This document shows, piece by piece, positions 1-46,472 of a stretch of DNA of 64,000 nt. Where the stretch lies: the IMG/VR virus record IMGVR_UViG_3300031787_000001, positions 1 to 64,000 of that record; one strand, 5' to 3'. The notes below the pieces were generated by a model, which worked only from the letters and a program-made list of their open reading frames with translations, was not told where the DNA came from and did no database searches. A program made the position numbers and the translations under genes. How positions within the stretch are numbered: position 1 is the stretch's first letter; every line of letters starts with the position of its first letter.

Positions 1-3000
1 TTTTAGGGTTTATAAATTTAGCATTTGCGGTAATAATTTTAGATCCACTAATAACATTAGGTGTTTGAAATCTAGTACCATAAAAATATGAAGTACTACT
101 ACTATCTTTTATTTCACCCCATAATAATGGTTTTGGTTTAGGATCTGTTTTAATGTTATTGATAACACCCATTGTCATATCATCATCAATTTTATATATC
201 CCTCCACCCATTTTAACTACCGCCGCTCTTAACCATTCATAATTCTTATCAGGAGATGAATAGTTTTTATTTTCAATTAATTGTATATATTTTTCACCAG
301 TTGTTTTATTATCACTAAATCCATTATACGGTACACCAAAAATATTAACACCCGACCTGTGTACTAATGTTTCACCATTAAATGATTTACCAGATAAGTC
401 TACTGTCACTGTCCTTCCATCTTGTACTGTTAATGATATTTCACTTTCAGGTCTCTTTATTAATGATTCTTTAACCTTTATTTGTGCTTTATTTACTATG
501 GACTCAAATAAAGGTCTATAGGTTGCCATAGTGGCCTCTTTTGGATCAGGTAAAGACGCGTATGGTATTCTTGTTCCCGTAAAATTTGTTGTTATATTAT
601 TATTTCTTATAGAATGTGTAACCTCCGTAATCCAATACGTACCTTTAAACATTGGAATATTTTTAAGATAAAAATACATTGTTGGTTGTATCATGACGTT
701 ACCCATAGAACTAACTTGACATGTATATGAAGATTGTCTGTATATGTCATATAACCCAATATCTACTTGATATGCATTTGCACCTGATTCAGATCTACCT
801 AAATTTTCCATTGCAATAAATGATTCGGTAGTATTTTTTAATGATGATTGGTCAAGTTGTACTCCTTTAAAAATGCCTTGATTTTGATCACCAAAACTTA
901 CCTCGAATGCAACGACTCTATTTGATTTTGATAATTCAGCATTATCAAATACAGCAGGTGCGGTTATTATTAATGGATTTCTATTTTGATCTTGTATATT
1001 AAAACTGTCATCAATAAATTTATAATCTTTATTATATTTGTTAAGATCCAAATGTTTTGATGTTGGTCCAGTATATTGTAAAATTACTTTGGGTGACGAT
1101 TCTTGATAATCAACTTCTAAAAACGTACCAAACAAATTTTTGGCTAATTTTTTGGAAGGAATCAATTTAACTTTATTACTATAATTTGCACCATAAAAAT
1201 TTATATATGAGGGAAGTACTCTCATATCAAATCCGGTACCTTGTATTAAAACAGAAATAACACTGTATAAATTTAATTTTTGATTTTTTGTGTCACCTAA
1301 TGGTATTAATTTTTGTATATTAAAATACGCATCAGAACCAATATCTTTGTTTGCCTTATCTAAAAATAAAAATTCTTCAAATAATAATCTTTGACCGATT
1401 GAATTACCTCCAATCCACTTATCATTAAATGACTTGAAAAAATTATATGTTTCTAGTTTTAATATTTCATCACCAAAACCACTAACTGGTGTCATTCTTT
1501 GTGCATCTGTTGTTTTTGTTAACTTACTAAACTGTGAAATTAAATTTTGTAAAAATTCGGTATGTCTTTTTGTTAAAGTTGTTGTTGAATCAATTACTAA
1601 AACATTTTTTCTAATATAATCTATAAAATCAGGTTTAGTTGGTGATGCGGTGTTTAAATAATGTCCAGCAAATATTTGTGCTAACGATCTAAACTGAATT
1701 ACATTGTCCTCACTTAACTCAATATCATTTGTTGCAAAAAATTGTAAATATTTATTATCAATATCTTCACCTAAATAAAGATCAATATATTTTGAATTGG
1801 GCGATACTTGAGCAATATTAAATGTATTATAACTAAATGTACTTCCAGAATTTATATTTGCAAACCCATTAACAACATATGAATCAATTTCTTTAGGGTT
1901 TCCGTTTGTAAATTTTATTAAATTATCTTTACTTAATAATTTTGTATGTATGTTCTGTATCTTGTCTTTTTGTCTATTTTTTATATCAATAATAATTTGA
2001 TCTGTTCTACCAGTATCTGTTGATATTTTTTCTACACTACACAAATCTTTTAAAATAGATTGAAACTTATCATAAAAAACACTTTCAAATTTTTTATAAG
2101 GTAATTCTTCTTTTACTGTCGACGTTGCAAAATTTATGAACATTTCTTCCATTTCGTTCAGAATATCTGGATTAAATGTTGCAATTAAATCGATAACTTT
2201 TCTATAGTTTGTGTCCATAGAAAATATATTATCATTAGTTGTGGAACCACTATTATAATTTCTGGTATATTGGTATGGGGAAGCAAATGTTAATCCACTA
2301 AAATTTTTAAATAAACCCTCATCCTCCCAAATTATTCTTGTGTATTTTTGTTCTTGTTCAAAAAAATTATTTTGTGGTATATATGAATTACCCCCATCTG
2401 ATGGTAATACAGTAAATCTGAGATCTTTCGGGTCGTATTTGGAATTATCAACAAATGTTGTCCAATATCTCATTCCGTTTGTCACAACTCGAGCATTACC
2501 TATAATCCCACCTGCAACAACATTTACATCAAAAGAAGGACTACCTGAAAATACATCATAATGATTATAACCATTAACTACTTGGTGAAATATAGCATCA
2601 TAATATGGATGAATACCTACATCAGAATTATTAGAATATGTCACACCACTACCATTTAATGTAAATGTAAATCCAGAATTATTATCAAAAAACTCACTAC
2701 CATTAAAATTTGTGGTTATATTTGATGTACTTAAAAAACCATCTAATATATCATTATTGTCTAAAATTTTCTTTTTATATCTGTGATATATTGATCCCCA
2801 TTTTAATAGTAAATGATATGGTATAAAATGTGTTGAACCTATTTCTCTAAATAAAGAAGATACTTTTATGTTATTTGAAAATCTATCTTCCAAATCTTTA
2901 AAAGGTAATGAATTAAGTAATAAATATGCAGAACCCACATACTTACCAACTCTTCCTGATTTGAAGAAATCGGAATATAATTGTTTGTGGAAATATGGTG

Positions 3001-5614
3001 TATTTAAAATATTGACTTTAGTATCTAAACCGAATGTTTGTACCGTACCAGGTACTGGTACTGTAGTGGTACCTAAATACAATTTATTTGAAAATATATT
3101 ATTCTTAAAATTATCTTTAACCCATAATTCGGGATTCACCTCTGTTGAAATAAATCCTTCCGATGTATTGACTTTTAAAGTGTTACCAAATTTAAACTCA
3201 TTATCAGTAAAACTATTTTGTTTTAAATAAGACAAATATGTTTTTGAATTAAATGGATATATTTCTGTTCTATATGTATCTGACTGATATCTTAATAAAT
3301 CATCACTTAATTTAACATATAAAGAATCATTATTAACAGGTTTAGGGTTAGTATTATTATTAGAATTCCTGTTAGGGTCGTAATATTGTTCAAAAATGTG
3401 TGGACTATCTATTATGCTAGAAATATAACCTACTGTTGGTAGTCTATCAACGTAATATGGATATCTATCAAATGGTGATAGACTTCTCATTAAGTTTAAT
3501 AAGTCAGGAAAACTTTTAACACTGTCTCTTAATATATCAATAACATCATTGTCATGTTTTATCGACTCGCTTAAGTTTTCAAATTCAAAATTAGATAATT
3601 CTCTTATTGTATTTGAATTAAAAGAATCAAATAATGTTATATAATATGATCTTTCAAATATTTCATATAATATAGAAACTAATGTTTTTTCTGTATAAGG
3701 AATTACACCTAAAGATTTACCAAAACCATTTATTAGTGTGTCAAGTGTACTTATCTTTTTTATTTTACCCTCATCTAAATTATCTTCAAAAACGTAATCT
3801 ATTTTACCAATACCACCTTCCTTTTCTGATAATGGGTCATATTTTTTAGTTGTTACCGCAATATAGTCTTCAACAAAATCAATTTCTGGCCACAATTTCT
3901 TATCATTAGTTTTCAATTTTTGTAATAGATCTTTATCACCAGGATATGCCACTACTTTACTTTTACTACCTGAACCTGTACTTTTTTTAACTTCCGGCCA
4001 AGGATATACCGCACCACCACCAGGTGTTTCATCGGAAAATCCGACTAATAAATTTTTTCTAGTTTCGGCATCTTGAAATGCCTTATTATGTGTATCTTTT
4101 AATAGTCTAATGTAAACTTCTGCATTAGCAAGAACCACAGCAAATATGTTTCTTATTGTTGGTTCAAACCCAATACCCTTTTTAGGGTCTCTTAAAATTG
4201 TATTTATTTCTTTTTCAACATCTTTTTGTAGTGCATCTTTTTGTTTTAAAAATTCATTTACCATTTTTTTATAATCCTCACCAAGTAAATCAATATTCAA
4301 CCCAACTTGTTTGTCTTTATAACCAATATAATCATCGATATTTTTAATATCGTTACTTTTCTTTAATTTAGTAAAATCACTACTTGTCTTGTTTATTACA
4401 TTATTGGCAAATAAATTAGTTTTAGATAAAAGTTCTTTATACCTATTTAAACCCTTTTCAAGAGTATCGTCTGAATCTCCTTTTATTTTTGATTTATCTG
4501 TTTTATCGGATATATTTAATAAATAAAATAATTCATCCCCCCTTGTTCCGCCAGTGAAACTAACAGTAGATAAATTTTTCTTTGTCCATATGTTTATGTA
4601 TTCACCTAATTTTGATAAACCATCTTCATATTCAACTATACCTGCGAAAACCTTAAAATCTACTTTTTGAAATATTTCGTTTTCCAGTATTTTATCTAAA
4701 CTTTCTGAAATTGTAATAAGTTCTTTAAGTGTTTTTACGGGAAAATTTGGATCAATTAATTTTTTTTGTTTTAGTTCATTATAAACAGATCTTAAAATTG
4801 CATATCCTCTAGATGATTTTGAAATCTTTTTTTCAAAAGTACCACTACCTTCATTAAATGTTGGTCTTGTACTATTTTCAACTCTAAACATATAAGGACA
4901 ATTTAACATACCATTTAATGGTATATCAGAAATGTGTGCAAATGTTGCACCAACGAATGTTGCCATACTTTCAAAATTACCAGACCCTTCGTTAAATTTT
5001 GTTGTAAATTTTACTAAATGTAATCTATATCTAATTGCCTTCCCATAATAACCTTTAACTGTCAAATAAAATATCGGCCAAGGTAAATGAAAAAATGCTT
5101 TATATGGTGAGTTTTCGGGAGACTCAAATAATGTTTTACCTCTAACATCTATAAAGTTTATTGTAACTTGTGGAATTGAGTTCAAACCTTTGGTTGTTAT
5201 TGTTATACTATCAATACCAAAACTTTGTCCGGTTCCATCCGATTGAAAAAATTCACCAGTACCTACATTTATTTTATTACCATTTATGTCGGTACTTTTT
5301 TTTGTAATTTCTGTTTTTTCTAAAAATGCATTTGTCCATGACGTATCAAAATCATCACCATTTTGATTTCTTAAAAAATTAAGAGTACCTTTTGCTATAG
5401 ATATTAAAGTATTTTTATCATTACTAGAAACTAAAATAGATCTGGGAATAATATCCGCCTCCAAATTAACATACATCATCAAATTTTCAGGACGAATAGA
5501 TCTAGGTTCTATTTCACCATCCACAACAACACTGTTAGGGTCGACATAAATTAAATTATTTACATCTGATTTAACAAGAATGTCCTCACTATTTGAAATA
5601 TCTTTATTCCCCAT
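1..5614 (-). CDS. Giant baseplate hub-like virion protein (>1870 aa), partial; the 3' end lies beyond the left edge of the window
   Basis: ATG at 5614 (MGNKDISNSEDILVKSDVNNLIYVDPNS...) overlaps the end of the upstream gene. The same frame reads through at about 690 (QVSSMGNVMIQPTMYFYLKNIPMFKGTYWITEVTHSIRNNNITTNFTGTR, resembling a gp27/gpD-type hub C-terminus) and at the window edge. It is absent from the ORF track, consistent with no in-window stop. Confidence 0.8.
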   Translation of the reverse strand, partial: MGNKDISNSEDILVKSDVNNLIYVDPNSVVVDGEIEPRSIRPENLMMYVNLEADIIPRSILVSSNDKNTLISIAKGTLNFLRNQNGDDFDTSWTNAFLEKTEITKKSTDINGNKINVGTGEFFQSDGTGQSFGIDSITITTKGLNSIPQVTINFIDVRGKTLFESPENSPYKAFFHLPWPIFYLTVKGYYGKAIRYRLHLVKFTTKFNEGSGNFESMATFVGATFAHISDIPLNGMLNCPYMFRVENSTRPTFNEGSGTFEKKISKSSRGYAILRSVYNELKQKKLIDPNFPVKTLKELITISESLDKILENEIFQKVDFKVFAGIVEYEDGLSKLGEYINIWTKKNLSTVSFTGGTRGDELFYLLNISDKTDKSKIKGDSDDTLEKGLNRYKELLSKTNLFANNVINKTSSDFTKLKKSNDIKNIDDYIGYKDKQVGLNIDLLGEDYKKMVNEFLKQKDALQKDVEKEINTILRDPKKGIGFEPTIRNIFAVVLANAEVYIRLLKDTHNKAFQDAETRKNLLVGFSDETPGGGAVYPWPEVKKSTGSGSKSKVVAYPGDKDLLQKLKTNDKKLWPEIDFVEDYIAVTTKKYDPLSEKEGGIGKIDYVFEDNLDEGKIKKISTLDTLINGFGKSLGVIPYTEKTLVSILYEIFERSYYITLFDSFNSNTIRELSNFEFENLSESIKHDNDVIDILRDSVKSFPDLLNLMRSLSPFDRYPYYVDRLPTVGYISSIIDSPHIFEQYYDPNRNSNNNTNPKPVNNDSLYVKLSDDLLRYQSDTYRTEIYPFNSKTYLSYLKQNSFTDNEFKFGNTLKVNTSEGFISTEVNPELWVKDNFKNNIFSNKLYLGTTTVPVPGTVQTFGLDTKVNILNTPYFHKQLYSDFFKSGRVGKYVGSAYLLLNSLPFKDLEDRFSNNIKVSSLFREIGSTHFIPYHLLLKWGSIYHRYKKKILDNNDILDGFLSTSNITTNFNGSEFFDNNSGFTFTLNGSGVTYSNNSDVGIHPYYDAIFHQVVNGYNHYDVFSGSPSFDVNVVAGGIIGNARVVTNGMRYWTTFVDNSKYDPKDLRFTVLPSDGGNSYIPQNNFFEQEQKYTRIIWEDEGLFKNFSGLTFASPYQYTRNYNSGSTTNDNIFSMDTNYRKVIDLIATFNPDILNEMEEMFINFATSTVKEELPYKKFESVFYDKFQSILKDLCSVEKISTDTGRTDQIIIDIKNRQKDKIQNIHTKLLSKDNLIKFTNGNPKEIDSYVVNGFANINSGSTFSYNTFNIAQVSPNSKYIDLYLGEDIDNKYLQFFATNDIELSEDNVIQFRSLAQIFAGHYLNTASPTKPDFIDYIRKNVLVIDSTTTLTKRHTEFLQNLISQFSKLTKTTDAQRMTPVSGFGDEILKLETYNFFKSFNDKWIGGNSIGQRLLFEEFLFLDKANKDIGSDAYFNIQKLIPLGDTKNQKLNLYSVISVLIQGTGFDMRVLPSYINFYGANYSNKVKLIPSKKLAKNLFGTFLEVDYQESSPKVILQYTGPTSKHLDLNKYNKDYKFIDDSFNIQDQNRNPLIITAPAVFDNAELSKSNRVVAFEVSFGDQNQGIFKGVQLDQSSLKNTTESFIAMENLGRSESGANAYQVDIGLYDIYRQSSYTCQVSSMGNVMIQPTMYFYLKNIPMFKGTYWITEVTHSIRNNNITTNFTGTRIPYASLPDPKEATMATYRPLFESIVNKAQIKVKESLIKRPESEISLTVQDGRTVTVDLSGKSFNGETLVHRSGVNIFGVPYNGFSDNKTTGEKYIQLIENKNYSSPDKNYEWLRAAVVKMGGGIYKIDDDMTMGVINNIKTDPKPKPLLWGEIKDSSSTSYFYGTRFQTPNVISGSKIITANAKFINPK

Positions 5615-5927
5615 AATATAATTTATACAATTCTACGTTTCTTTTGTAATCTTGTAAAGAGGTAACTAGTGGAAATGGTACTCTAACTACAAAATTATCA
5701 GGTATTTCGAATTCAATACTACCCGCTAATGGGTTGGCCAATAATATTAACCACCCGAAGACAGGAGTACCATAATATTGATCTGAAATTTTATCTAATC
5801 TAGTTTGATTTTTTTTAAAAAAAACATACTTATCTGTCTTTTTTATAGGTATTTCTATGCCAGGTACTATTCTAAACTCACCATCAATAAGAAATTCGTC
5901 ATATCTATCATAATAACTTCTACTCAT
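5604..5927 (-). CDS. LysM-like baseplate wedge / tail protein X-like (T4 gp53 / P2 gpX type)
   Basis: RLDKISDQYYGTPVFGWLILLANP is the typical LysM-like baseplate motif; the gene lies between large baseplate genes. Confidence 0.7.
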   Translation of the reverse strand: MSRSYYDRYDEFLIDGEFRIVPGIEIPIKKTDKYVFFKKNQTRLDKISDQYYGTPVFGWLILLANPLAGSIEFEIPDNFVVRVPFPLVTSLQDYKRNVELYKLYYGE

Positions 5928-8900
5928 TTCTAAAATAATTTAGTTTTTTATCTACAGGTTGTTTTGTAGAATTTATTTTTGTAAGTATATCTTTTTCATT
6001 GGTGTCGGTAATATCTGATTGTGTACCTGTTTTAAACTTAATTTTTAATGTGTCTTTTCTTTTTGGGTATTTTTTTAATTTAAATTTAATATCATCAGGT
6101 TTTTCTAAAAATTTATCTAACGACTTGGATAATTTTTCTTTTTCAACATTAGGTCTGAAAACAAGTACATCAGTATATTGATTTAATATATTATTTTTAT
6201 AATCACTTAATAAATTTGAAATCATTTTTATAACTTGTGCGTCTGTTATTGATTGTGGATTATTAAAATTAACTGTGTTAGAAATTTTATTAGTTAATCT
6301 TACATGGTTATCACTAATATAATCAACGCACGATGAATATTTGTCCAATAAAATATCATATGTAAATCCAGATAAATCAACCTTTGTGAATTTTTCATTT
6401 TCTATTTTTCCATCATGTATATAATAGATTAAATAGTTTAACCCATCTAATGTTTTTATAATTTCATTTCTAGCCAATATTAGATCTTTTTCAATTGCCC
6501 CAAATTTTTCTGGAATTTCATCAAATATTTTTTTAATTTCTGAACTTAAATATGGTTTTAAAATTTGATCTGAATTTGGGACTTTAGCATCCGGTATTTT
6601 TGCGTCTAATAGGTCTTTTGTTAAACTTGGTATTTTATTTTCAATAACATCAACAAATCTTTCTCTAACGTCTCTCAATATTATTGGTAATTCTTTACTT
6701 TTTTTGTATTCACCTACTAAATCTAAAACAACAGTTTGAGCACCATTTGGTTGTGTATAAACATCATATTTTGTTATTGGTCTATATGTTTCAGAAAAGA
6801 ATAAACTTGTAATATCTTCACCATATTTTAATAAAGATGTGTTATAAGCACTCTTATATTTTTCAAAATAATTCTCAACTTGTTTAAATAATCCGTTGAC
6901 TAAATCATCGTAACTTATTTCTTCACCTTCAGGTTTACCTATAAATTTACCATTAACAATATTATTTCCATTATTAACATCGTCTTGTCTTTCAGGTGTT
7001 TTTGGTGCGTTTTTTTGTATCTTTTCTAAAAAATCTTTTGTAAACTGTTCCGCATCAACACCAGCAATTTTTGTATTTGTTGGTATGGATCTCTCATCGT
7101 ACATTTCGGTATTAGCATAAAAATTAGATGATAGTGCGTTCTGTAATTTTTCAACTGGTTTTTCTAATCCATGTCCACCAATGAAACTTAATTGTAATGT
7201 GACAGACGCAATCATCGGTTGTACACCAATACCTTCAGGATTAAAATCCCAAACAGCATCATCAAAATTTATACTTATATCTTTTATGGCAACTTTTGAA
7301 TGATAAAAATCCCCAATTCTTATTATACAAATTGGTGGTGGTCCAAATGTTGTGTTTCTGGCATTTAAATCGGCTTCATCTGATAATCCTTTTATTGGTA
7401 ATGTGTCGCCAGGTCTAATACATTGATGTAAAAATGTTAATCTAGCATTTAAACCTTCCGGTGTCATTGAATGAAATGCGGGATGAAAATATTTTAATTT
7501 TTCTTTTAAAGATGAAAATTGTATTGGTGAATCCTCCTCTAATTTTTTGAAATAAAAACACTCCGATAATGTTTTCATTATCAATCTTTTCATAACATCA
7601 ATAGGTGGTTTCTTTATTTCTTTTTTAATTTCAATTTTACCATCTTCTTCTAATGATGTCTTTGGTAAAACAGGTGGATTTGGTGGTGGTGGAGGTGGTG
7701 TTGGTTGTACCTGTTGTTTAATATATCCTATCTTTACTTTTGATTGTCTACAATTAACCGCAACTGGTGCTACAACATCTAATTTTTCACCTGCAGATAC
7801 ATTTAGCGGATATAAAAAATCTTGTGTTGTACACGAAACACTAGATCCATTTTCTTCTACATTACCATATTCACCATAGTTTGTTACTTTTATTTTAAAT
7901 TTACCATCTATCTCGTATCCAATGTCTCTAAATGTAACAATATCATTAACCCATTGTATTGGGGACTTAGTGTCTTTAATATTATTGGTGGTTGGATCTG
8001 TTGGAAATACATATTTTAATCTTGTTGTTCTAAACTTTTCCATATCAAACGAAGGATCATTTGCTATTTTTTCAAAAATGTCCTTTAAGATTGAATATGT
8101 TCTTCTAAAAGATAAATTAAGGTTATATTCATTATTTGTTAACGCGGATGTTGATGATCCTATTTCAATTGTAACTTCTTGTACCGTACCTCCAGATATG
8201 TCTACTTTTAATTGATCAATTGTTTTTCTATATGTACTATAATTCTCATCTAATTTACTAAAAATATCTGTTAATCTATTTAAAGATATTTGTATTAAAC
8301 TACTTTTACTTGTACCTCTAACATCTGTCTTACCATATAATAATTTTATATCGTTTAACATGTTTTTATCAGGATTTGTTGTTGCACTATATGCGGTTAA
8401 CAAAAGATTTAAATTTTTTTGTAAAGCATTTTTCTGTTTGTCATAATCTCCAGTTTGTTGTGTGGGTGACGATCCTTTATAATAAGAATATGCAGTTTCA
8501 TAACTTTCCGCAGTTATATAATTCTTAGTACTCATTTTTGGATAATCGTTCTCAAATTTTAGATTAACATCTAAATTAATATTTTGTGGTTGAGTACCTC
8601 CACCGCTAGGTGATGTGTTTGGTTCATCTTGTTTAATATCTTCAGTTACTACTTTATATTTTTGTATTAATTCAGTTGATACACCCGCATTCAAATATCT
8701 TTGAATTAGTTTTATATCATCTTCATTTAATGTTGCGTACTTTTTAACTAAATCATATAAGTCAACATCTTGACATCCAGCAAAAAAGGCATTTATATAA
8801 TTGTCCGCCTCTTCATCTGACATATCCTTAAAGACTTCTCTAACCAATAAGTTCATTATACTTGGATGGTCGACAATTACTTTAAATGAAATTGTACCTG

Positions 8901-10773
8901 ATCTTGATGTATTTTGATAAGTATAGATTGGTTCAGGTCTACCTAAAAATAAGTTTTCTTCCCATCTTGCATTGTTTGTTTCATTTACTTTTAAATCATA
9001 TGGTGGAAACCACATAACTCTACCACCGTTTGGTCCTCTTTCGCAATATGGTAAATCTTGAACTGTAAATCCTTCTCTATTAGATGTTTTCCATGCCAAG
9101 TTCTCAATTGAAAACATATATTTTTTAGCATAAAATCCACCACCATACGGGTAATTTGGAAATATATTTGACGATCCTTCAAAACTTTTATTACCATCGG
9201 ACATAGGTGCAATATTCAAATTATAAGGTGTTGTTAAAACACTACCTTCAAATTTTCTAATATTAGTCCCTCTTTTCATGGTATCTGACCTTGTCATGTA
9301 TGGTCTATCTTTTGTCCACACTCTACAATACTCAACACCACTTTCTTCTCCTGTAAATTTATCTGTATATTTAACTGCAGAACCTCTAGATATTCTAATA
9401 TCACCTTCACCAAAAACTCTACTTGTTTGGTCAATAACATTTGCCACATGTGAACGGGCTTCACCACCATTTGTTGGTAATGTATTTAATAGTTCTTGTG
9501 TTACTCCTAAAATAGAATCTTCTCTAAAATCAAAACCACTCGATAGAGACTGATCGTAATTTGATTTTTGTAAATTAAAAAACTCGTTGTTCGCACCTAT
9601 TTTATTTTTTGAATTTTTACTTATCCAAGTTAATTTATTTGAAATCTGTCCTCCCTCACCGATATTTTTTGTTCTTTGAAATAGAGTTGCTTGTATCTCA
9701 TCAAACATTAAAGTTAAATAAAAATTACTTTTAACAGGTCTATCATTAAAATCACTCATCGCGTATTTTACATCATTTCCTCTGTCATCACCGATATATG
9801 CGATACCTGCCGGTGCTTCAACACCTAAAACATTTTTAACACCTTGTGCAACATTATCAACAAAATTAAATAATTTAGATGAATTTTGTGATCTTGCTGT
9901 TGTGGTATAATTTGGTGCATATTTTGAAAAAGATAAGTTGTCAAATAATCTTTGTTTCTGACCCTGACCCATATACTCAATAAAAAGATCAGAAGGTTTC
10001 CTGTCTCTTTGTGGTCTTCTTTGAATACCGATTAAAGAACCTAAAGCACCTGTGACATCCTGAAGTATCGCACCTAATTCAGTTCTTGTATCAGGTCTAA
10101 CATTTACAGGATTCGCCGGATTACTTAAATAATCACCAGGTATTTCTGTAAATGGGAATTCCACACCGGCAACAGATTGTAAAAAATCAATGGCTTTACC
10201 GGGTAATGTTTTTGCAACAGTAATTTGATAGTTTGGATCAACTAACGGTTCTCTACCTGTTATTAGATTTATTGCTGTGGTATTATTACCTCTTATTGCA
10301 TCTAATAATCTAACCCTACCTTCTGTTACTCTTTTAAGATTTTGTTCTATTCTAGAATACACGGGACCCTTTTGATCTTTATCCCTAATATATGATGCCG
10401 CAAATTTAAATAATTCAGATTCATTATCGTAATTTGATGTGGTCATTATACCAACTAAATTATAGTTACCACTTCTAAAATATGGTGTTCCATTATAATA
10501 TAATAATAAATTTGCTCTTCTTGGAATTGTATCTATCCTATCTTTAACAAAATATTGTAACGGTTTAAATGTGTTAGAATTTTGATGTTGTTGTAAATCA
10601 TTTGCTCTATTTGTATCTACCGCACCCGGATCTACATTTGAAAAATCACTTAGATTTTGTACTGTATAGTTACTTGCATTAAATGTCTGTGGACCATTTG
10701 GTTGTTGTAGTGTTCTAACAATTAACGCATCCCTAAATGTTCTTGTTGTATTAAAATCTAAATATGTTGGCAT
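5920..10773 (-). CDS. 1617-aa baseplate / tail-tube-initiator-like protein with two tube-fold-like segments and an OmpA-C-like segment
   Basis: Follows the tape measure gene. Segments FPPYDLKVNETNNARWEENLFLGRPEPIYTYQNTSRSGTISFKVIVD and PPICIIRIGDFYHSKVAIKDISINFDD...PMIASVTLQLSF resemble gp48/gp54/CIS-tube folds; IEIGSSTS...YNLNLSFRRTYSI resembles OmpA-C. Confidence 0.55.
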   Translation of the reverse strand: MPTYLDFNTTRTFRDALIVRTLQQPNGPQTFNASNYTVQNLSDFSNVDPGAVDTNRANDLQQHQNSNTFKPLQYFVKDRIDTIPRRANLLLYYNGTPYFRSGNYNLVGIMTTSNYDNESELFKFAASYIRDKDQKGPVYSRIEQNLKRVTEGRVRLLDAIRGNNTTAINLITGREPLVDPNYQITVAKTLPGKAIDFLQSVAGVEFPFTEIPGDYLSNPANPVNVRPDTRTELGAILQDVTGALGSLIGIQRRPQRDRKPSDLFIEYMGQGQKQRLFDNLSFSKYAPNYTTTARSQNSSKLFNFVDNVAQGVKNVLGVEAPAGIAYIGDDRGNDVKYAMSDFNDRPVKSNFYLTLMFDEIQATLFQRTKNIGEGGQISNKLTWISKNSKNKIGANNEFFNLQKSNYDQSLSSGFDFREDSILGVTQELLNTLPTNGGEARSHVANVIDQTSRVFGEGDIRISRGSAVKYTDKFTGEESGVEYCRVWTKDRPYMTRSDTMKRGTNIRKFEGSVLTTPYNLNIAPMSDGNKSFEGSSNIFPNYPYGGGFYAKKYMFSIENLAWKTSNREGFTVQDLPYCERGPNGGRVMWFPPYDLKVNETNNARWEENLFLGRPEPIYTYQNTSRSGTISFKVIVDHPSIMNLLVREVFKDMSDEEADNYINAFFAGCQDVDLYDLVKKYATLNEDDIKLIQRYLNAGVSTELIQKYKVVTEDIKQDEPNTSPSGGGTQPQNINLDVNLKFENDYPKMSTKNYITAESYETAYSYYKGSSPTQQTGDYDKQKNALQKNLNLLLTAYSATTNPDKNMLNDIKLLYGKTDVRGTSKSSLIQISLNRLTDIFSKLDENYSTYRKTIDQLKVDISGGTVQEVTIEIGSSTSALTNNEYNLNLSFRRTYSILKDIFEKIANDPSFDMEKFRTTRLKYVFPTDPTTNNIKDTKSPIQWVNDIVTFRDIGYEIDGKFKIKVTNYGEYGNVEENGSSVSCTTQDFLYPLNVSAGEKLDVVAPVAVNCRQSKVKIGYIKQQVQPTPPPPPPNPPVLPKTSLEEDGKIEIKKEIKKPPIDVMKRLIMKTLSECFYFKKLEEDSPIQFSSLKEKLKYFHPAFHSMTPEGLNARLTFLHQCIRPGDTLPIKGLSDEADLNARNTTFGPPPICIIRIGDFYHSKVAIKDISINFDDAVWDFNPEGIGVQPMIASVTLQLSFIGGHGLEKPVEKLQNALSSNFYANTEMYDERSIPTNTKIAGVDAEQFTKDFLEKIQKNAPKTPERQDDVNNGNNIVNGKFIGKPEGEEISYDDLVNGLFKQVENYFEKYKSAYNTSLLKYGEDITSLFFSETYRPITKYDVYTQPNGAQTVVLDLVGEYKKSKELPIILRDVRERFVDVIENKIPSLTKDLLDAKIPDAKVPNSDQILKPYLSSEIKKIFDEIPEKFGAIEKDLILARNEIIKTLDGLNYLIYYIHDGKIENEKFTKVDLSGFTYDILLDKYSSCVDYISDNHVRLTNKISNTVNFNNPQSITDAQVIKMISNLLSDYKNNILNQYTDVLVFRPNVEKEKLSKSLDKFLEKPDDIKFKLKKYPKRKDTLKIKFKTGTQSDITDTNEKDILTKINSTKQPVDKKLNYFRNE

Positions 10774-13659: not shown

Positions 13660-13689
13660 AAAACCAATAGAAAAATATCTATTGGTTTT
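13660..13689 (-). terminator. Intrinsic terminator after the tail tube gene
   Basis: AAAACCAATAG-8 nt-CTATTGGTTTT inverted repeat with A/T tracts. Confidence 0.65.
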
Positions 13690-13710: not shown

Positions 13711-14199
13711 TTAATAAACAAGAATACAACGATCTGGTCTTAATCCACAATCAATTGATGCAATTTCATCTTGTTTGTAATCAAGTGAACCAAAATTTAA
13801 ACTTGTTATAAATGTACCTTGAAGAATCCATTTTTCAACAACAACACCTGTTGGGTCCAACATTTCTAATTCAATATCTTTTTTATAACCAGCAGCATAA
13901 CCCATACGACCTGTAACTGATTCTGCATGTAAACGGAACCACTCCATTAACGCCTGTGCGGCAGAAGGACCAATTGGGTCTTTAAATGTTACTTTCATCT
14001 CATCCCATGTAAATCTACCAGCAACATATGTTGAGGTATTTAAAAAAGGAATCTCAGTTGCATTTATTTTTGCTGATGGTCTCTGTGTTGATATTACATA
14101 CCATTCGTTAATTCCCAAAGACGAAGGGAAACGAAGGATAAACCTGTTCTGTCTTTTCGGTTCGTAAGGAACCGGCATTTTCATTAGTAAATCTGCCAT
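13711..14199 (-). CDS. gp19: Tail tube protein (T4 gp19-like)
   Basis: EPKRQNRF...QRPS...YVAGRFTWDEMKVTFKDP...EWF...GYKKDIELEMLDPTGVVVEKWILQG; directly downstream of the sheath gene. Confidence 0.9.
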   Translation of the reverse strand: MADLLMKMPVPYEPKRQNRFILRFPSSLGINEWYVISTQRPSAKINATEIPFLNTSTYVAGRFTWDEMKVTFKDPIGPSAAQALMEWFRLHAESVTGRMGYAAGYKKDIELEMLDPTGVVVEKWILQGTFITSLNFGSLDYKQDEIASIDCGLRPDRCILVY

Positions 14200-14229
14200 T
14201 GTAGATTATTTTGTTTTTTTTATCTTTAT

Positions 14230-14237
14230 TATAAATA
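14230..14237 (-). promoter_or_regulatory. Putative late promoter TATTTATA (tail tube); further copies at 14325-14332 and 14354-14361
   Basis: Same motif recurs upstream of about 19 structural genes in the window. Confidence 0.6.
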
Positions 14238-14429
14238 TGTCGTAAATCAAAAAATATTTTTAGATATTATTGATTTTATCAAATATTTTTCGTAGTTTTT
14301 TACTACTAGTATATCTGGTCCCAGTATAAATATTACAATAAATAAAATAAGTTTATAAATAATATAAAACTAGAATACTGGATCTAGTATACTGGGTGAA
14401 ATATAAAAATATAATCTTTATAAAATAAA

Positions 14430-14445
14430 TGTTTCTCGTGAAACA
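14430..14445. promoter_or_regulatory. parS-like palindrome TGTTTCTCGTGAAACA
   Basis: 15/16 match to the bacterial parS consensus TGTTTCACGTGAAACA; intergenic; the palindrome extends into the AAA/TTT flanks. Confidence 0.6.
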
Positions 14446-14459
14446 TTTTTTAGAATAAA

Positions 14460-14484
14460 AAAGGTGGTCAACTAGACCACCTTT
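14460..14484 (-). terminator. Intrinsic terminator after the tail sheath gene
   Basis: AAAGGTGGTC-AACTA-GACCACCTTT perfect stem, followed by a T-run on the minus strand. Confidence 0.8.
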
Positions 14485-14503
14485 ATTTTTATCTCCTTTT
14501 AGA

Positions 14504-17335
14504 TTATATATTATCAAATGAAGCACCTGTTGGTGTTATAATGAACTCTAAATCAATAAATTCAAGAGAACGAGTAGGTTTAATATAGATTTTACCTCTC
14601 AATGTGTTAGCGTCAATATCTTCAGGGGCATTTGATACCGTAACACGGAAATCATAAAGACCTCTTTCTTTCTTGATTGCTTCCATTATTGGATTAACCA
14701 ATCTTAAGAATTCATTTCTTACCTGATCATCATTTTGTTCAAACAATAATCTAACGGCTACCGCAGATATTAATTTTCTTGCTCTTAATAATAATCTTCT
14801 TACGTTAATTCTATCAAGTGCAGATTCTCTAACTTGTAAGGTTTTATTACCCCAAATTATTGTACCTGTATCTGAGAAAGTCGCAATTGGGTTTATTCTA
14901 CCTTTGTAAAGAATGTCTCTTTCGTCCAATGTTAATTTCTTAACAGCTTTAATTGATTTAACTAAACCTCTTGAATAACCCGCAACCGCGAACCATGGAT
15001 AAGAAACATTATCAGTTAATGCTACATTTCTTAATACCTCACCTGTTGGTGGTATGTAAAGTTGTGTTGCATTATCACCATCTCTTACCTGTATCCAAGG
15101 CCAGTATGTAGCTGAATAGTTACTATCATAACCTAAATCATCTAACATACCAACAACTTCTTCGGCATCATCTACATTTGGTGAATTTATAATATATAAT
15201 GAATCGGCTCTTTCTTCTTCAACCATATCAATTGCTTGATTAGTTAATGAATTGTGATCATAAAAGTTTAGACCAGGCGTTGCGAATACATTTATATTTA
15301 CCGCCTCAGGATTTGAGAATGTTTCAATACCTTTTAGAAAAGCATAATAATCTGAGTTACCTTCAGTAGAACTGAAAACACCACCATTACTTTCCCAGTT
15401 TGACACATATGTATTTTTTCCAAATATGTATTGATCGGTGTTTGTTTTTACATTTCTGTAAATGTCCCAACCATCAAATCCACCATAAGCCGCGAATGTG
15501 AACTTACGGAAAGTTATATTTTCTAACTTATCTTTATTTAAACCTTCTAAATCATATGGGGTTGTTTTATATGTTATACCCGTAATTGACGCGGCGTTAA
15601 CAGATAAGTGGAATGCATATGTTGTTGTATCTTCTGAACTTAAACCTTTATATTTTAAAAGATCGTTATCATACTTGAACCCTTCTTGAGTTGAAAAACC
15701 TAAAGATACTTTTCTTGGTTTATCTCCATTTGTTGTGATTGGAGATCCGTCGGATTCATAACCAACGATATCACCCGCATCGAAGTATTCTGTTTTATAC
15801 ATTAAACTACCCAATATTGAATTTGTTCCGAAACTTGTGTTACTTGAAAAACCTTTGAAACCTGCGGGAATTGCATCTGCCGGTGCGTTTTCTTTCATCT
15901 CCAACATAATGAATTTTGATTTTAATTCATATTCACCATCACTCGTACCTAATTTTTTAGCAATATATCCCGGAACTTCAGGGTCCATAGAACATCTTGA
16001 ATATTTTTCAAGAGCCACTACATTTTCATCGGTATCATTAAAATCACGAACAAGTAAATCAAATTCTTTTGTATCTAAATTAATGTTAGCAATTGTAATT
16101 TTTACTTGTTGATTAGACGCTTCACCATCAGATATTGTGATAACATCAAAAAGATCTGCAACTTTACCACCACGAACTTCAGATACTACTGTTGGTGACA
16201 ATGCAGTACTCCATCTTTCCGCGAAATCGAGTTGGTCTAAATTATAAACATTACTAGTACTTAAACCTCTAATTAAACCTTGTTTATATAAATTTTTAAC
16301 TAAATTAGGATAAGACTCGTGAAGATATAAAGGGAATTCAACATAAGATTTATCAAATACAGAATTACCAATTACTTTACCAATATATTTTGAAGATGTT
16401 AAATCCATACTACATTGATATGATTTAAGACCACCGGTTAATCCATTAACACTTAATTTGAATTCACTTAAAGGATCAGAATCTAATGTAGAAGATGTGA
16501 TATTAACATTTGAAGAATTTGTCACTTCTAATGTTAAAGATTGACCAACATATCTACCTCTAGATCTTAATGCCGCAACAATAACATTCGAATAATCCGT
16601 ATTTAAAGAAGCAGGATACTTGAATCTAGTTACGGTAAATGTATTTCCTGTATCGGGATAAACAAATAAATAAGAATAAACACCATCAATTGTTGTATCT
16701 ACACCTGGAGTTGATTCAGTATAATAAACATTATACCAATTTTTACCATTGTTTGTACCTATTGGTGATGATATTGTTGTACCAGTTAAACCAGATACTG
16801 ATGAATTAGGAACAGGTCCAACTGTAAACCAGTTACCACCATTAAATGTTGTTCCACTTATATACTCAGGTATTGTAGTACCATCTGTTGTTAACTTATC
16901 TGATAGTTCAGTATAAAACGCACTTAATGTAACTGCTGTTGTTGACATTCCACCATTTGTGGTTGTAGGAGTTGCGGTTGTATCTACAGTAACACCACCT
17001 AATGTTCTAATACCAAAAGTGTTAAAAGGTCTGTAACCTGTTAAACCTAAAACTCTTGTTACAAATAATTGATTAGATTCTTCTAAATATGATTTTGCAA
17101 CATATCCTAATTCATATTTTGGATTACCATTACCATCTTTTTCAGGTGATGTTGTTCCGAAATATGTTCTAAACTCATCAAAACTTGTAATTAATACTGG
17201 TTCGAAAGCAGGTCCTTTTAATGTCTCCCCAACCAAACCCAATGTAGTTACACCAACACTTTGTGCAACAAATGTTAAATCTAATTCAGATGTGTACACA
17301 CCTGGTGACACGAATACTCTGTTTGAAGTTGCCAT
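14504..17335 (-). CDS. gp18: Contractile tail sheath protein (T4 gp18-like, 943 aa)
   Basis: FVSPGVYTSELD N-terminus; PWFAVAGYSRG, LYKGRINPI, IWGNKTLQ...SALDRINVRRLLL, IYIKPTRSLEFI C-terminal motifs. Confidence 0.93.
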   Translation of the reverse strand: MATSNRVFVSPGVYTSELDLTFVAQSVGVTTLGLVGETLKGPAFEPVLITSFDEFRTYFGTTSPEKDGNGNPKYELGYVAKSYLEESNQLFVTRVLGLTGYRPFNTFGIRTLGGVTVDTTATPTTTNGGMSTTAVTLSAFYTELSDKLTTDGTTIPEYISGTTFNGGNWFTVGPVPNSSVSGLTGTTISSPIGTNNGKNWYNVYYTESTPGVDTTIDGVYSYLFVYPDTGNTFTVTRFKYPASLNTDYSNVIVAALRSRGRYVGQSLTLEVTNSSNVNITSSTLDSDPLSEFKLSVNGLTGGLKSYQCSMDLTSSKYIGKVIGNSVFDKSYVEFPLYLHESYPNLVKNLYKQGLIRGLSTSNVYNLDQLDFAERWSTALSPTVVSEVRGGKVADLFDVITISDGEASNQQVKITIANINLDTKEFDLLVRDFNDTDENVVALEKYSRCSMDPEVPGYIAKKLGTSDGEYELKSKFIMLEMKENAPADAIPAGFKGFSSNTSFGTNSILGSLMYKTEYFDAGDIVGYESDGSPITTNGDKPRKVSLGFSTQEGFKYDNDLLKYKGLSSEDTTTYAFHLSVNAASITGITYKTTPYDLEGLNKDKLENITFRKFTFAAYGGFDGWDIYRNVKTNTDQYIFGKNTYVSNWESNGGVFSSTEGNSDYYAFLKGIETFSNPEAVNINVFATPGLNFYDHNSLTNQAIDMVEEERADSLYIINSPNVDDAEEVVGMLDDLGYDSNYSATYWPWIQVRDGDNATQLYIPPTGEVLRNVALTDNVSYPWFAVAGYSRGLVKSIKAVKKLTLDERDILYKGRINPIATFSDTGTIIWGNKTLQVRESALDRINVRRLLLRARKLISAVAVRLLFEQNDDQVRNEFLRLVNPIMEAIKKERGLYDFRVTVSNAPEDIDANTLRGKIYIKPTRSLEFIDLEFIITPTGASFDNI

Positions 17336-40100: not shown

Positions 40101-40622
40101 AGTTGGTGTTGGAGTACTAGTTGCAGTTGGTGTTGGAGTACTAGTTGCTGTTGGAGTACTAGTTGCGGTTGGGGTTGGTGTAATTGTGGGTGTTGGGGTT
40201 AATGTCGGGCTAGGTGTTGGTGTCGGAATGGCAATACTTAAATAATGAGTTTCTCCCGATATTCCAACATATGTATATATATGATTACTTAGTATTATAT
40301 GAGAATAGATATATTCAGGAACATTAAAATGTGTTACAAATTCATTGTAGTTAAATGTTACAGATAAACCGGAATATATATAATTAGGATTATTTATCGT
40401 ATTATCTATCTCAACAAGTGTTATTGTTAAGGTATTACTACTAAAATTTTCTAAACTATCGTCTATTTTTAATGAATTATAAAAAATTGGACCACTAAAA
40501 TCAAGTACCTCTTTATTGTAATCATTACCTATTTTTGATAATTCATAATCGTAATATTCTGAGCTATCCAATTTAACATCTAATCTAGACCCAAAAAACT
40601 TTAAAATGTTCTGATTATTCAT
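37170..40622 (-). CDS. 1150-aa mucin-like virion protein with four Pro/Thr(Glu/Ser) tracts separating small beta domains
   Basis: Translation shows (TPTPTETS)n tracts; late motif TATTTATT at 40628-40635. Confidence 0.8.
37285..37742 (-). repeat. PT tract 4 (18/24-nt degenerate coding repeats)
   Basis: Repeats of GGTGTACTAGTTTCTGTT / GGTGTAGGT units; boundaries approximate. Confidence 0.85.
37835..38330 (-). repeat. PT tract 3
   Basis: Same repeat family; boundaries approximate. Confidence 0.85.
38737..38975 (-). repeat. PT tract 2
   Basis: Same repeat family; boundaries approximate. Confidence 0.85.
39782..40230 (-). repeat. PT tract 1
   Basis: TATSTP and TETSTPTP units; boundaries approximate. 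Confidence 0.85.
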
Positions 40623-45869: not shown

Positions 45870-46472
45870 ATGGAAAAACAACAAATTGAAGACTATATTA
45901 AAAGATTACAACAATTAGAGTCTGACATGAGTGGTGGTGAAGAAGATATAGATCACGATTTTATACAGGATTTAGATAAATTATTAAAAAATCTAAGTAC
46001 AGATATCGGATCTTCTTTTGGTCCACAATCATTAAAAATTCCTGTTAGGTTTAAAAAATTACACAATTTGGCAGTCACCCCTAGATATTCTAAAGATGGT
46101 GATGCTGGCATGGACCTAACAATTACCGATATTATATCAGAAACAAAAAGTGATGTAACATACGGATTCGGAATTGCAATAGAAATCCCAAAAGGATATG
46201 TCGGATTATTATTTCCGAGATCGTCAATTCGTAAATACGATTTAGCATTAACTAATTGTGTTGGTGTTATTGATAGTGGGTATAGGGGTGAAATACAAGC
46301 AACTTTTAAAAAAACAAGTTGGTTAAAAGGTGAATCATCAGAAAAATACAATGTGGGTGAAAGAGGTGCTCAAATTATTATATTACCGTATCCACAAATA
46401 GAGTTTATTGAAACCGATAATTTATCGGAAACTGAAAGAGGTGGAGGTGGATTTGGTAGTTCAGGATTGTAG
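45870..46472 (+). CDS. dut: Trimeric dUTPase with an acidic N-terminal extension
   Basis: All five motifs present: AGMDL, PRSS, GVIDSGYRGEI, AQIII, RGGGGFGSSG. Confidence 0.95.
   Translation: MEKQQIEDYIKRLQQLESDMSGGEEDIDHDFIQDLDKLLKNLSTDIGSSFGPQSLKIPVRFKKLHNLAVTPRYSKDGDAGMDLTITDIISETKSDVTYGFGIAIEIPKGYVGLLFPRSSIRKYDLALTNCVGVIDSGYRGEIQATFKKTSWLKGESSEKYNVGERGAQIIILPYPQIEFIETDNLSETERGGGGFGSSGL

What the first reader, a model, noticed from the sequence alone, without database searches (positions are those of the whole stretch)
14430..14445. Host-type parS centromere palindrome on a lytic-looking jumbo phage
Seen: TGTTTCTCGTGAAACA, a 15/16 match to the bacterial parS consensus, in the largest intergenic region of the window, with no ParA or ParB gene in the window. 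A rough estimate assuming about 28% GC (eyeballed) gives roughly 1e-3 chance occurrences at one mismatch or fewer. Established: parS loads CTP-dependent ParB clamps, which spread, recruit SMC and couple to ParA. Inference: the phage may use host ParB/SMC to position, compact or shield its genome, or may titrate ParB to disturb host segregation and replication initiation. I am not aware of this being described as a phage strategy.
Basis: partly seen in the sequence, partly recalled or inferred. Interest (0 to 1): 0.75.

Follow-up and report, generated by a model that had tools for sequence, protein, structure and literature searches.

The report
Host-type parS site on jumbo phage
A large lake-water phage that probably infects Flavobacteria carries, between its tail sheath and tail tube genes, one conserved copy of its host's chromosome "centromere" sequence, which probably lets it borrow the host's DNA-segregation protein, a trick so far shown only for the small Bacillus phage phi29.

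Summary
TGTTTCTCGTGAAACA lies at 14430-14445, a 15/16 match to parS and the only such site in the 287-kb genome (about 0.005 expected). It sits in the 304-bp gap between the tail sheath and tail tube genes, just after the sheath terminator.

It is not chance. In 54 of 78 related phage loci a site with at most 3 mismatches lies next to the tube gene, against 1.4% of background windows. The flanks and terminator stems differ between lineages. Several relatives carry a perfect TGTTCCACGTGGAACA.

That variant is the chromosomal parS of Flavobacteriaceae (36 of 41 genomes sampled), and three lines of evidence point to a Bacteroidota host. The phage has no canonical ParA or ParB. It does encode a divergent ParB/Srx-fold early protein at 158.9 kb.

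Best reading: an orphan host-type parS that loads host ParB. This window's copy is slightly degenerate, because one half-site is changed at a position that determines specificity.

The strategy is not new. Virulent phage phi29 carries five host parS sites used through Spo0J. This case is a new variant: a T4-like jumbo phage, a host that forms no spores, and a single syntenic site. Binding was not tested.

The parts
14430..14445 (.). parS-like 16-bp palindrome. It reads TGTTTCTCGTGAAACA on the + strand and TGTTTCACGAGAAACA in the sense of the tail genes. One half-site is perfect (TGTTTCAC) and the other has one changed base.
   Evidence: Syntenic counterparts in relatives.
14427..14448 (.). Extended palindrome AAATGTTTCTCGTGAAACATTT with 9-bp arms. 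As sense RNA it would fold at -7.8 kcal/mol and is followed by AUUUUAU.
14460..14484 (-). Intrinsic, bidirectional-looking terminator of the sheath gene (AAAGGTGGTC..GACCACCTTT plus a T run; -15.8 kcal/mol). The parS-like site follows it by 14 nt.
   Evidence: In relatives the site always follows a terminator whose stem sequence differs between lineages.
14504..17335 (-). Tail sheath gene (943 aa), the upstream neighbour.
13711..14199 (-). Tail tube gene (gp19-like, 162 aa), the downstream neighbour.
14306..14396 (-). Conserved block between the site and the tube promoter. Inverted repeat CCCAGTATA (14388-14396) and TATACTGGG (14320-14328) flanks an AT-rich spacer, with CCAGTAT and CTAG motifs, in a genome that otherwise avoids CTAG. 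Its role is unknown. It may belong to the late-promoter region rather than to the parS element.
14230..14238 (-). Late-promoter-like motif ATATTTATA about 31 nt before the tube ATG. A second copy lies at 14325-14333. The parS-like site is about 190 nt upstream of the proximal one, so it is not an operator overlapping the promoter.
   Evidence: The motif precedes 40 genes, including sheath and tube.
13660..13689 (-). Terminator of the tube gene. In 14 related loci the parS-like site sits just after this terminator instead of after the sheath terminator.

Best explanation
The palindrome is an orphan, host-type parS: a cis-acting DNA site that copies the chromosomal centromere sequence of the phage's Bacteroidota (probably Flavobacteriaceae-like) host.

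Shown here:
- It is sequence-conserved, present in one copy and syntenic across a large family of lake-water T4-like jumbo phages.
- Its variants match the host family's own parS spectrum.
- The phage encodes no canonical ParA or ParB.

Inferred from established ParB biology:
- Host ParB dimers recognise the site through their helix-turn-helix domains.
- They bind CTP, close into clamps and slide onto the flanking phage DNA. Each phage genome then carries a partition complex that can engage host ParA and SMC.

Inferred most likely benefit, by analogy with phi29/Spo0J and with the parS-dependent stabilisation of plasmids: the phage genome travels with the host chromosome-segregation machinery when lytic growth is stalled (carrier state or pseudolysogeny in slow-growing lake bacteria). 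Titration of ParB by the many phage copies, and compaction by SMC, are possible side effects or alternative benefits.

The copy in this window is a slightly degenerate member. Both arms are of the T type, and one base is changed at position 6 of one half-site. It may therefore bind ParB more weakly than the perfect sites of its relatives.
For: - Site and rarity.
- Conservation: 54 of 78 related loci have a site with at most 3 mismatches next to the tube gene. Forty lie after the sheath terminator, 14 after the tube terminator and none have both. Only 1.4% of 550-bp background windows reach that score. The exact core GTTYCACNNGRAAC occurs in 43 loci against 0.11 expected.
- Sequence, not structure, is conserved. 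Flanking bases and the adjacent terminator stems differ between lineages while the palindrome keeps its letters.
- A complete relative (310,542 bp, tube protein 84% identical) has a terminator followed directly by ATGTTCCACGTGGAACAT.
- Mixed half-site pairs (TGTTCCACGTGAAAC, TGTTTCACGTGGAACA) and extra half-sites beside the main site fit a dimeric DNA-binding protein.
- Host type: 36 of 41 Flavobacteriaceae genomes have 1-3 exact TGTTYCACGTGRAACA sites and none match the reversed control. The sites are mostly TGTTCCACGTGGAACA and often come in pairs about 1.9 kb apart. In MAG G009 the pair flanks mnmG. Host sites vary at the outermost bases, as the phage sites do. All five host genomes tested encode canonical ParB, and G009 also has ParA beside it.
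- Host assignment: no Shine-Dalgarno signal; 38 Bacteroidota-type promoters TTTG-N17-21-TAnnTTTG; a related 248-kb phage contig binned in a Flavobacteriaceae MAG.
- No canonical ParB_N, ParA (AAA_31) or integrase in the genome.
- Precedent: phi29 parS/Spo0J (PMC2731898).
- Wider pattern: exact parS 16-mers are far more often intergenic in viral contigs than matched control palindromes. The counts are 28 of 120 against 2 of 66, and 47 of 119 against 0 of 39. They include unrelated phage contigs with head, portal or phi29-like modules.
Against: - No binding evidence of any kind. The complex prediction was not folded.
- This window's site has a central change (CACGAG instead of CACGTG). Many relatives also carry changes at the two central bases of one half (CACGCG, CACATG, CACAAG). 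Such changes were not seen in the host's paired sites among the matches listed (278 further matches were not shown).
- About 30% of related loci have no recognisable site, and one 248-kb relative has none with at most 2 mismatches in the whole bin. The site is therefore dispensable.
- The constant position just after a terminator beside the tube gene is not predicted by a pure centromere role.
- The phage has no known way of persisting as an episome.
- The host is inferred, not known.
- The phage encodes a ParB/Srx-like protein that might be the true partner.
Confidence: 0.55

Rival explanations
1. The site is the target of a phage-encoded protein, not host ParB. The leading candidate is the early ParB/Srx-fold protein at G000 158871-159614. 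The OmpR-type winged-helix protein encoded next to it is a second candidate. On this reading the phage has a private system, and the site only resembles, or descends from, host parS.
For: - The phage encodes a 247-aa protein assigned to phrog_12305 ('ParB-like partition protein', E 1e-28). Its model (pLDDT 83) gives weak fold matches to ParB, KorB and Noc.
- The gene has a Bacteroidota-type early promoter.
- The protein was found in the three genome lineages with a site that could be checked (G000, G001, G005). It was not found in the one large relative that lacks a site (G009 contig).
- The central-base variants of the phage sites lie outside the variation seen in the host sites that one search listed.
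Against: - Profile comparison aligns only the N-terminal domain with host ParB (probability 4%). No homology to the parS-recognising helix-turn-helix was detectable.
- No Pfam ParB_N match reaches the cut-off.
- Nothing explains why a private system would keep the host's exact 16-mer in several lineages.
- The co-occurrence rests on four lineages. Two further contigs were too short to hold both loci.
- The second motif copy, inside this gene, is a by-product of codons and is lost in orthologues.
Confidence: 0.2
2. The palindrome acts as a nucleic-acid hairpin. It would be a weak second terminator or an RNA-stability element after the main terminator, and its likeness to parS would be incidental.
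For: - It always follows a terminator and is often followed by a T run.
- The sense RNA folds at -7.8 kcal/mol.
- Variation is concentrated in the central four bases, which would form the loop, and at the outer bases. The G000 arms differ from the family majority by a complementary pair of changes.
Against: - The terminator scan does not call it, and Rfam finds nothing.
- Real terminators in the same gap change their stem letters freely, whereas this element keeps its letters.
- Seven of 33 distinct contexts carry a C·A mismatch in the 5-bp stem on the sense strand.
- Extra half-sites and mixed half-sites fit a protein better.
- Identity to the host family's parS at 16/16 in several lineages would be an unexplained coincidence.
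- Metatranscriptome contigs cover sheath and tube but none crosses 14200-14474. This is weak evidence because depth is low.
Confidence: 0.08
3. In this genome the site is a decaying relic. It is functional in relatives with a perfect core but disabled here by the central mismatch.
For: - The changed base lies at position 6 of the 7-bp half-site. From my own recollection of Jalal et al. 2020 (not checked here), this is one of two positions that separate parS from the Noc site.
- The host's paired sites among the matches listed keep the 14-bp core.
- About 30% of relatives have lost the site altogether.
Against: - Both arms are intact and both are of the T type, which is a legitimate parS variant.
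- The three 100%-identical contigs and two further records keep the same site.
- Natural parS sites with one mismatch are known to work in Bacillus (own knowledge).
Confidence: 0.15

Closest known systems
phi29 parS sites used through host Spo0J (Bacillus subtilis; Meijer et al. 2005, as described in PMC2731898 and PMC9437464)
   Same: A virulent phage with no partition genes of its own carries chromosomal-type parS sites that are recognised by the host's ParB homologue. This couples the phage genome to host chromosome segregation when lysis is deferred.
   Different: phi29 is a roughly 19-kb podovirus with five sites, and the benefit is entrapment in the spore of a Firmicute. Here the phage is a roughly 300-kb T4-like myovirus of a Bacteroidota host that forms no spores. 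It has a single site at a fixed place beside the tail tube gene, and binding is untested.
Chromosomal ParABS of bacteria (parS TGTTNCACGTGAAACA; ParB/Spo0J CTP-dependent clamp)
   Same: The same 16-bp palindrome. Relatives carry the exact variant used by Flavobacteriaceae chromosomes.
   Different: It lies on a virus, in a single copy, not beside an origin or parAB genes. This window's copy has a central mismatch.
SGI1 parS mimics that hijack the IncC plasmid ParABS system (PMC10954446)
   Same: A parasitic element carries only the cis site and uses another replicon's ParA and ParB for its own stability, at that replicon's expense.
   Different: SGI1 mimics a plasmid's parS and is an integrative mobilisable element. 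Here the mimic is of the chromosome's parS and sits on a phage.
Phage-plasmid partition cassettes (P1, N15; Mic1 proposal in PMC7156551)
   Same: A phage genome bears a centromere-like site.
   Different: Those phages encode their own ParA and ParB beside their own, unrelated parS. This phage has neither.

Membership tests
Chromosomal-type parS (ParB nucleation site) | 16-bp palindrome matching TGTTNCACGTGAAACA | tested here: met
   The window has a 15/16 match. Syntenic sites in relatives match 16/16.
Chromosomal-type parS (ParB nucleation site) | Matches the parS variant actually used by the host clade | tested here: met
   TGTTCCACGTGGAACA and TGTTCCACGTGAAACA dominate in 36 of 41 Flavobacteriaceae genomes and in the phage family. 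The T type seen in this window occurs in 2 of the 41. Caveat: the host is inferred, not known.
Chromosomal-type parS (ParB nucleation site) | Bound by ParB, with CTP-dependent loading and spreading | not testable with these tools
   The complex-prediction job was not folded and gives no evidence. EMSA, BLI or ChIP is needed.
Chromosomal-type parS (ParB nucleation site) | Intact 14-bp core, as in the host's sites | tested here: not met
   The window has CACGAG in place of CACGTG. The host's paired sites among the matches listed vary only at the outermost bases. Many relatives do meet this feature.
Chromosomal-type parS (ParB nucleation site) | Origin-proximal, usually several copies | tested here: not met
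   There is one copy per genome. GC skew shows no turning point at 14.4 kb. The phage origin is unknown.
Orphan host parS on a virulent phage (phi29 type) | Host-type parS on a phage that lacks its own ParA/ParB and lysogeny genes | tested here: met
   No ParB_N match above the cut-off, no AAA_31 ParA and no tyrosine integrase were found in an 86%-complete record. Caveat: a divergent ParB/Srx-like protein is present.
Orphan host parS on a virulent phage (phi29 type) | Host ParB-dependent segregation of the phage genome | not testable with these tools
   This needs an isolated phage-host pair.
Self-encoded phage/plasmid ParABS cassette (P1, N15 type) | parA and parB genes next to the site | tested here: not met
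   The neighbours are the tail sheath and tail tube genes. The only ParB-like gene lies 144 kb away.
Intrinsic terminator | G+C-rich stem followed by a U run; structure conserved rather than sequence | tested here: not met
   The scan does not call it. The stem is A/U-rich at -7.8 kcal/mol. Its sequence is conserved, and C·A mismatches occur in 7 of 33 contexts.

The most novel reading that the evidence does not exclude
Orphan copies of the host's chromosomal parS may be a recurrent, independently acquired feature of virulent phages well beyond the phi29 family. Examples seen here are T4-like jumbo phages of Flavobacteria and unrelated phages with the site in head or portal modules. On this reading they are a general way to load host ParB clamps on phage DNA and so be inherited during stalled infection. 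The divergent phage ParB/Srx-fold early protein might modulate the host clamp.
Probability: 0.3. Interest if true: 0.8.

Novelty: new variant of a known kind. Interest (0 to 1): 0.58.

Why it matters
If host ParB really loads on this site, a very abundant group of lake-water jumbo phages has a built-in way to travel with the host chromosome without lysogeny genes. That would give carrier-state or pseudolysogenic persistence in nutrient-poor waters a concrete mechanism that can be tested.

It would also extend the phi29/Spo0J principle from spore-formers to bacteria that form no spores, and from a 19-kb podovirus to 300-kb myoviruses. The match between phage and host parS variants could become a host-prediction signal for uncultured phages. 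The excess of intergenic parS 16-mers in viral contigs suggests the trick is common and overlooked.

Tried and rejected
- **Complex prediction.** Flavobacteriaceae ParB dimer with the 24-bp site: the job was counted but not folded, so it is no evidence.
- **Rfam on the gap.** Nothing meaningful.
- **Weak ParB_N match in the window (46330-46461).** It lies in a dUTPase gene and is spurious.
- **Second exact motif at G000 159525, inside the ParB-like gene.** It looked striking, but it encodes the conserved peptide VPCGT and is lost through synonymous changes in orthologues of 84, 75 and 67% identity. I rejected it as a codon by-product.
- **Origin-of-replication idea for the gap.** GC skew follows gene strand only and has no turning point there. 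This remains unresolved.
- **Raw counts across IMG/VR.** parS gave at least 120 loci against controls of 66, 12 and 3. Only the intergenic fraction and the multi-copy loci separate parS from the controls.
- **Nearby partition or origin genes.** tblastn with Flavobacteriaceae ParA, ParB, MnmG and YbeY found none in those loci. Divergent homologues could have been missed.
- **Nearest cultured phages.** They are too distant to give a host.
- **Co-occurrence of the site with the ParB-like gene.** Only four lineages were informative, because the two loci lie about 150 kb apart and most contigs are shorter.
- **The 1.9-kb insertions in the gap of some relatives.** They hold an endonuclease-like ORF, not a partition gene.
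- **Literature searches for host-type parS on lytic phages.** They found nothing until the phi29-like contig L316 pointed to Spo0J.

Full report
**Observation.** The 16-mer TGTTTCTCGTGAAACA is at window 14430-14445, one mismatch from the classical parS TGTTTCACGTGAAACA. The palindrome extends to 9-bp arms at 14427-14448. The window is the first 64 kb of a 286,785-bp IMG/VR virus record, 86% complete, GC 30.5%. No other site with at most 2 mismatches exists in the record. The independent-base expectation for at most 1 mismatch is 0.001 per window and 0.005 per genome. There is therefore no enrichment, only one very unlikely site.

**Setting.** All local genes are on the minus strand. The site lies in the 304-bp gap (GC 0.20) between the tail sheath gene (14504-17335) and the gp19-like tail tube gene (13711-14199). 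In the direction of transcription the gap holds, in order:
- the sheath terminator at 14484-14460 (-15.8 kcal/mol);
- the palindrome, 14 nt later;
- a block with the inverted repeat CCCAGTATA/TATACTGGG and several CTAG motifs, in a genome that otherwise avoids CTAG threefold;
- the motif ATATTTATA about 31 nt before the tube ATG.

That motif precedes 40 genes, including sheath and tube, so it is probably the late promoter. The palindrome lies about 190 nt upstream of it and is not an operator overlapping the promoter. The gap is the largest true intergenic region of the window. The apparent gaps at 1-5603 are one giant open frame that runs off the window's end.

**Relatives.** The tube protein recovers more than 595 related viral loci, of which 80 were kept (85-100% identity). 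I scanned, without preselection, the sheath-tube gap and the 250 bp after the tube gene.
- 54 of 78 loci have a site with at most 3 mismatches to TGTTYCACGTGRAACA. Forty lie just after the sheath terminator, 14 just after the tube terminator, and none have both.
- Only 1.4% of 550-bp background windows from the same loci reach that score. The mismatch distribution is bimodal.
- The exact core GTTYCACNNGRAAC occurs in 43 loci against 0.11 expected.
- A complete relative (310,542 bp with terminal repeats, tube protein 84% identical) has its own, different terminator followed directly by ATGTTCCACGTGGAACAT.
- Across lineages the flanks and the terminator stems change freely, while the palindrome keeps its letters.
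- Mixed half-site pairs occur (TGTTCCACGTGAAAC, TGTTTCACGTGGAACA). Several lineages have additional GTTCCAC or GTGAAAC half-sites beside the main one.
- About 30% of loci have no site. One 248-kb relative has none with at most 2 mismatches anywhere. The element is therefore conserved but dispensable.

**Host and host parS.** Three kinds of evidence point to a Bacteroidota host.
- There is no Shine-Dalgarno signal, and an A-rich tract lies at -13 to -10.
- Thirty-eight promoters of the Bacteroidota type TTTG-N17-21-TAnnTTTG are present, 28 of them in the 141-167 kb block of small genes.
- A related phage contig is binned in a Flavobacteriaceae MAG.

That MAG has two perfect TGTTCCACGTGGAACA sites flanking mnmG on a bacterial contig. 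In a sample of 41 Flavobacteriaceae genomes, 36 have 1-3 exact TGTTYCACGTGRAACA sites and none match the reversed control. The sites are mostly TGTTCCACGTGGAACA, often TGTTCCACGTGAAACA and rarely the T/T type, and they frequently come as pairs about 1.9 kb apart. At one or two mismatches, the paired host sites listed vary at the outermost bases only. All five host genomes tested encode a canonical ParB, and G009 also has ParA beside it. The phage family's sites thus mirror the host family's parS, including the Y/R degeneracy at positions 5 and 12 and the loose outer bases.

**What does not fit.** Many phage sites, including this window's, carry changes at the central two bases of one half (CACGAG here; CACGCG, CACATG/CATGTG and CACAAG elsewhere). 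The listed host sites do not show these. One half-site is always perfect. From my own recollection (not checked here), position 6 of the half-site is one of two positions that separate parS from the Noc site. The window's copy may therefore be weakened.

**Phage-encoded candidates.** No ParB_N match reaches the cut-off, and there is no ParA (AAA_31) or tyrosine integrase. A 247-aa protein at G000 158871-159614, outside the window, belongs to phrog_12305 ('ParB-like partition protein', E 1e-28) and has no Pfam match.
- Its model (pLDDT 83) gives weak fold matches to ParB, KorB, Noc and sulfiredoxin.
- Profile comparison with host ParB aligns only the N-terminal domain, at low probability. It does not align the helix-turn-helix that reads parS.
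- The gene has a host-type early promoter, and an OmpR-type winged-helix gene lies next to it.
- It was found in the three lineages that have a site and could be checked. It was not found in the one large relative that lacks a site. The sample is too small to weigh much.
- A second exact motif lies inside this gene in G000, but it is a by-product of the codons for VPCGT and is lost in orthologues.

**Hairpin rival.** The element always follows a terminator and is often followed by T's. Its variation is concentrated where a loop would be. On the other hand, its sequence is conserved and 7 of 33 contexts have a C·A mismatch in the 5-bp stem. The terminator scan and Rfam are negative. Metatranscriptome contigs cover sheath and tube but none crosses 14200-14474, though depth is low.

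**Wider pattern and precedent.** Raw counts are ambiguous, but two features separate parS from the controls.
- Intergenic location: 28 of 120 and 47 of 119 for parS, against 2 of 66, 1 of 12 and 0 of 39 for the three controls scored.
- Multi-copy loci: 26 for parS against 0 for the controls.

No ParA or ParB homologue was detected in those loci. Examples unrelated to this phage include:
- L143, in a major-head module;
- L107, in a portal module, where again the site directly follows a terminator;
- L316, a phi29-like podovirus contig with four perfect sites.

The last example led to the known precedent. phi29, a virulent Bacillus phage, carries five host parS sites, and host Spo0J helps segregate its genome into the prespore (PMC2731898; PMC9437464, citing Meijer et al. 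2005). A further analogue is SGI1, which carries mimics of its helper plasmid's parS (PMC10954446).

**Verdict.** The most likely mechanism is loading of host ParB on phage DNA, phi29-style, in a new setting: a jumbo T4-like phage, a Bacteroidota host that forms no spores, and one site fixed beside the tube gene. Still open are the binding partner, the effect of the central mismatch in this genome, and the benefit to the phage. The complex prediction was not folded and counts for nothing.

Noticed in passing
window 14306-14396; the same gap in L008, L012, L049, L066 and L097: Between the parS-like site and the tube promoter lies a conserved block. It has the inverted repeat CCCAGTATA...TATACTGGG around an AT-rich spacer. 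In relatives it has long arrays of ACTAG/CTAGTAT or TTAGAAT-like short repeats. The genome otherwise avoids CTAG threefold (273 seen against about 800 expected). This could be an array of protein-binding sites or of late-promoter-like elements.
   Followed up: partly
G000 141000-167000 (outside the window) and genome-wide: There are two promoter classes. The Bacteroidota host type TTTG-N17-21-TAnnTTTG stands before 38 genes, 28 of them in one block of small plus-strand genes (probably early genes). ATATTTATA stands before 40 genes, mostly structural (probably late genes). No Shine-Dalgarno signal is seen anywhere.
   Followed up: partly
G000 158871-160212 (L085:3872-5212): An early gene pair: a divergent ParB/Srx-fold protein (DGQNR motif, phrog_12305) followed by an OmpR-type winged-helix protein (Trans_reg_C, E 3e-20). 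The first gene contains GTTCCGTGTGGAACGGTGGAAC, a parS-core-like motif that is not conserved in orthologues.
   Followed up: yes
L005:903-2432 and L078:2398-3951: Some relatives carry a roughly 1.9-kb insertion in the sheath-tube gap. It holds a 509-517-aa ORF with many CxxC motifs and looks like an endonuclease. It occurs in either orientation in different lineages, which suggests a mobile homing-type gene that targets this gap.
   Followed up: no
window 1-5603, minus strand: One open frame of at least 1867 codons runs off the left end of the window. A 1617-aa ORF (5920-10773) lies just upstream of it in the direction of transcription. These are very large structural-region proteins and were not annotated here.
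   Followed up: no
window 37348-40210; G000 251144-258525: Long coding tandem repeats rich in GGTGTACTAGT units (Thr/Pro/Ser-rich when read on the minus strand) hold most of the genome's clustered CTAG sites.
   Followed up: no
L103 (G009:C36) 3341-3356 and 5235-5250; pairs in 14 or more other Flavobacteriaceae genomes: In Flavobacteriaceae the chromosomal parS sites typically form a pair about 1.9 kb apart. In the one genome inspected the pair flanks mnmG (gidA), and one site encodes the C-terminus of YbeY. The sites lie far from the parAB genes.
   Followed up: partly
L143:6483-6498, L107:5343-5358, L105:288-303, L316 (four sites), L331 and L370 (five sites each): Viral contigs unrelated to this phage carry perfect chromosomal-type parS sites with no ParA or ParB homologue detected nearby. 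Several sites sit directly after terminators in head or portal modules. One contig is phi29-like, and some contigs hold arrays of 3-5 sites within 1 kb.
   Followed up: partly
window 14200-14474: Four lake metatranscriptome runs give contigs over the tube (13737-14199) and the sheath (14475-17279), but none across the gap that holds the palindrome. One tube contig continues upstream into a different 5' sequence, which comes from a relative. Depth is low, so the hole proves little.
   Followed up: partly
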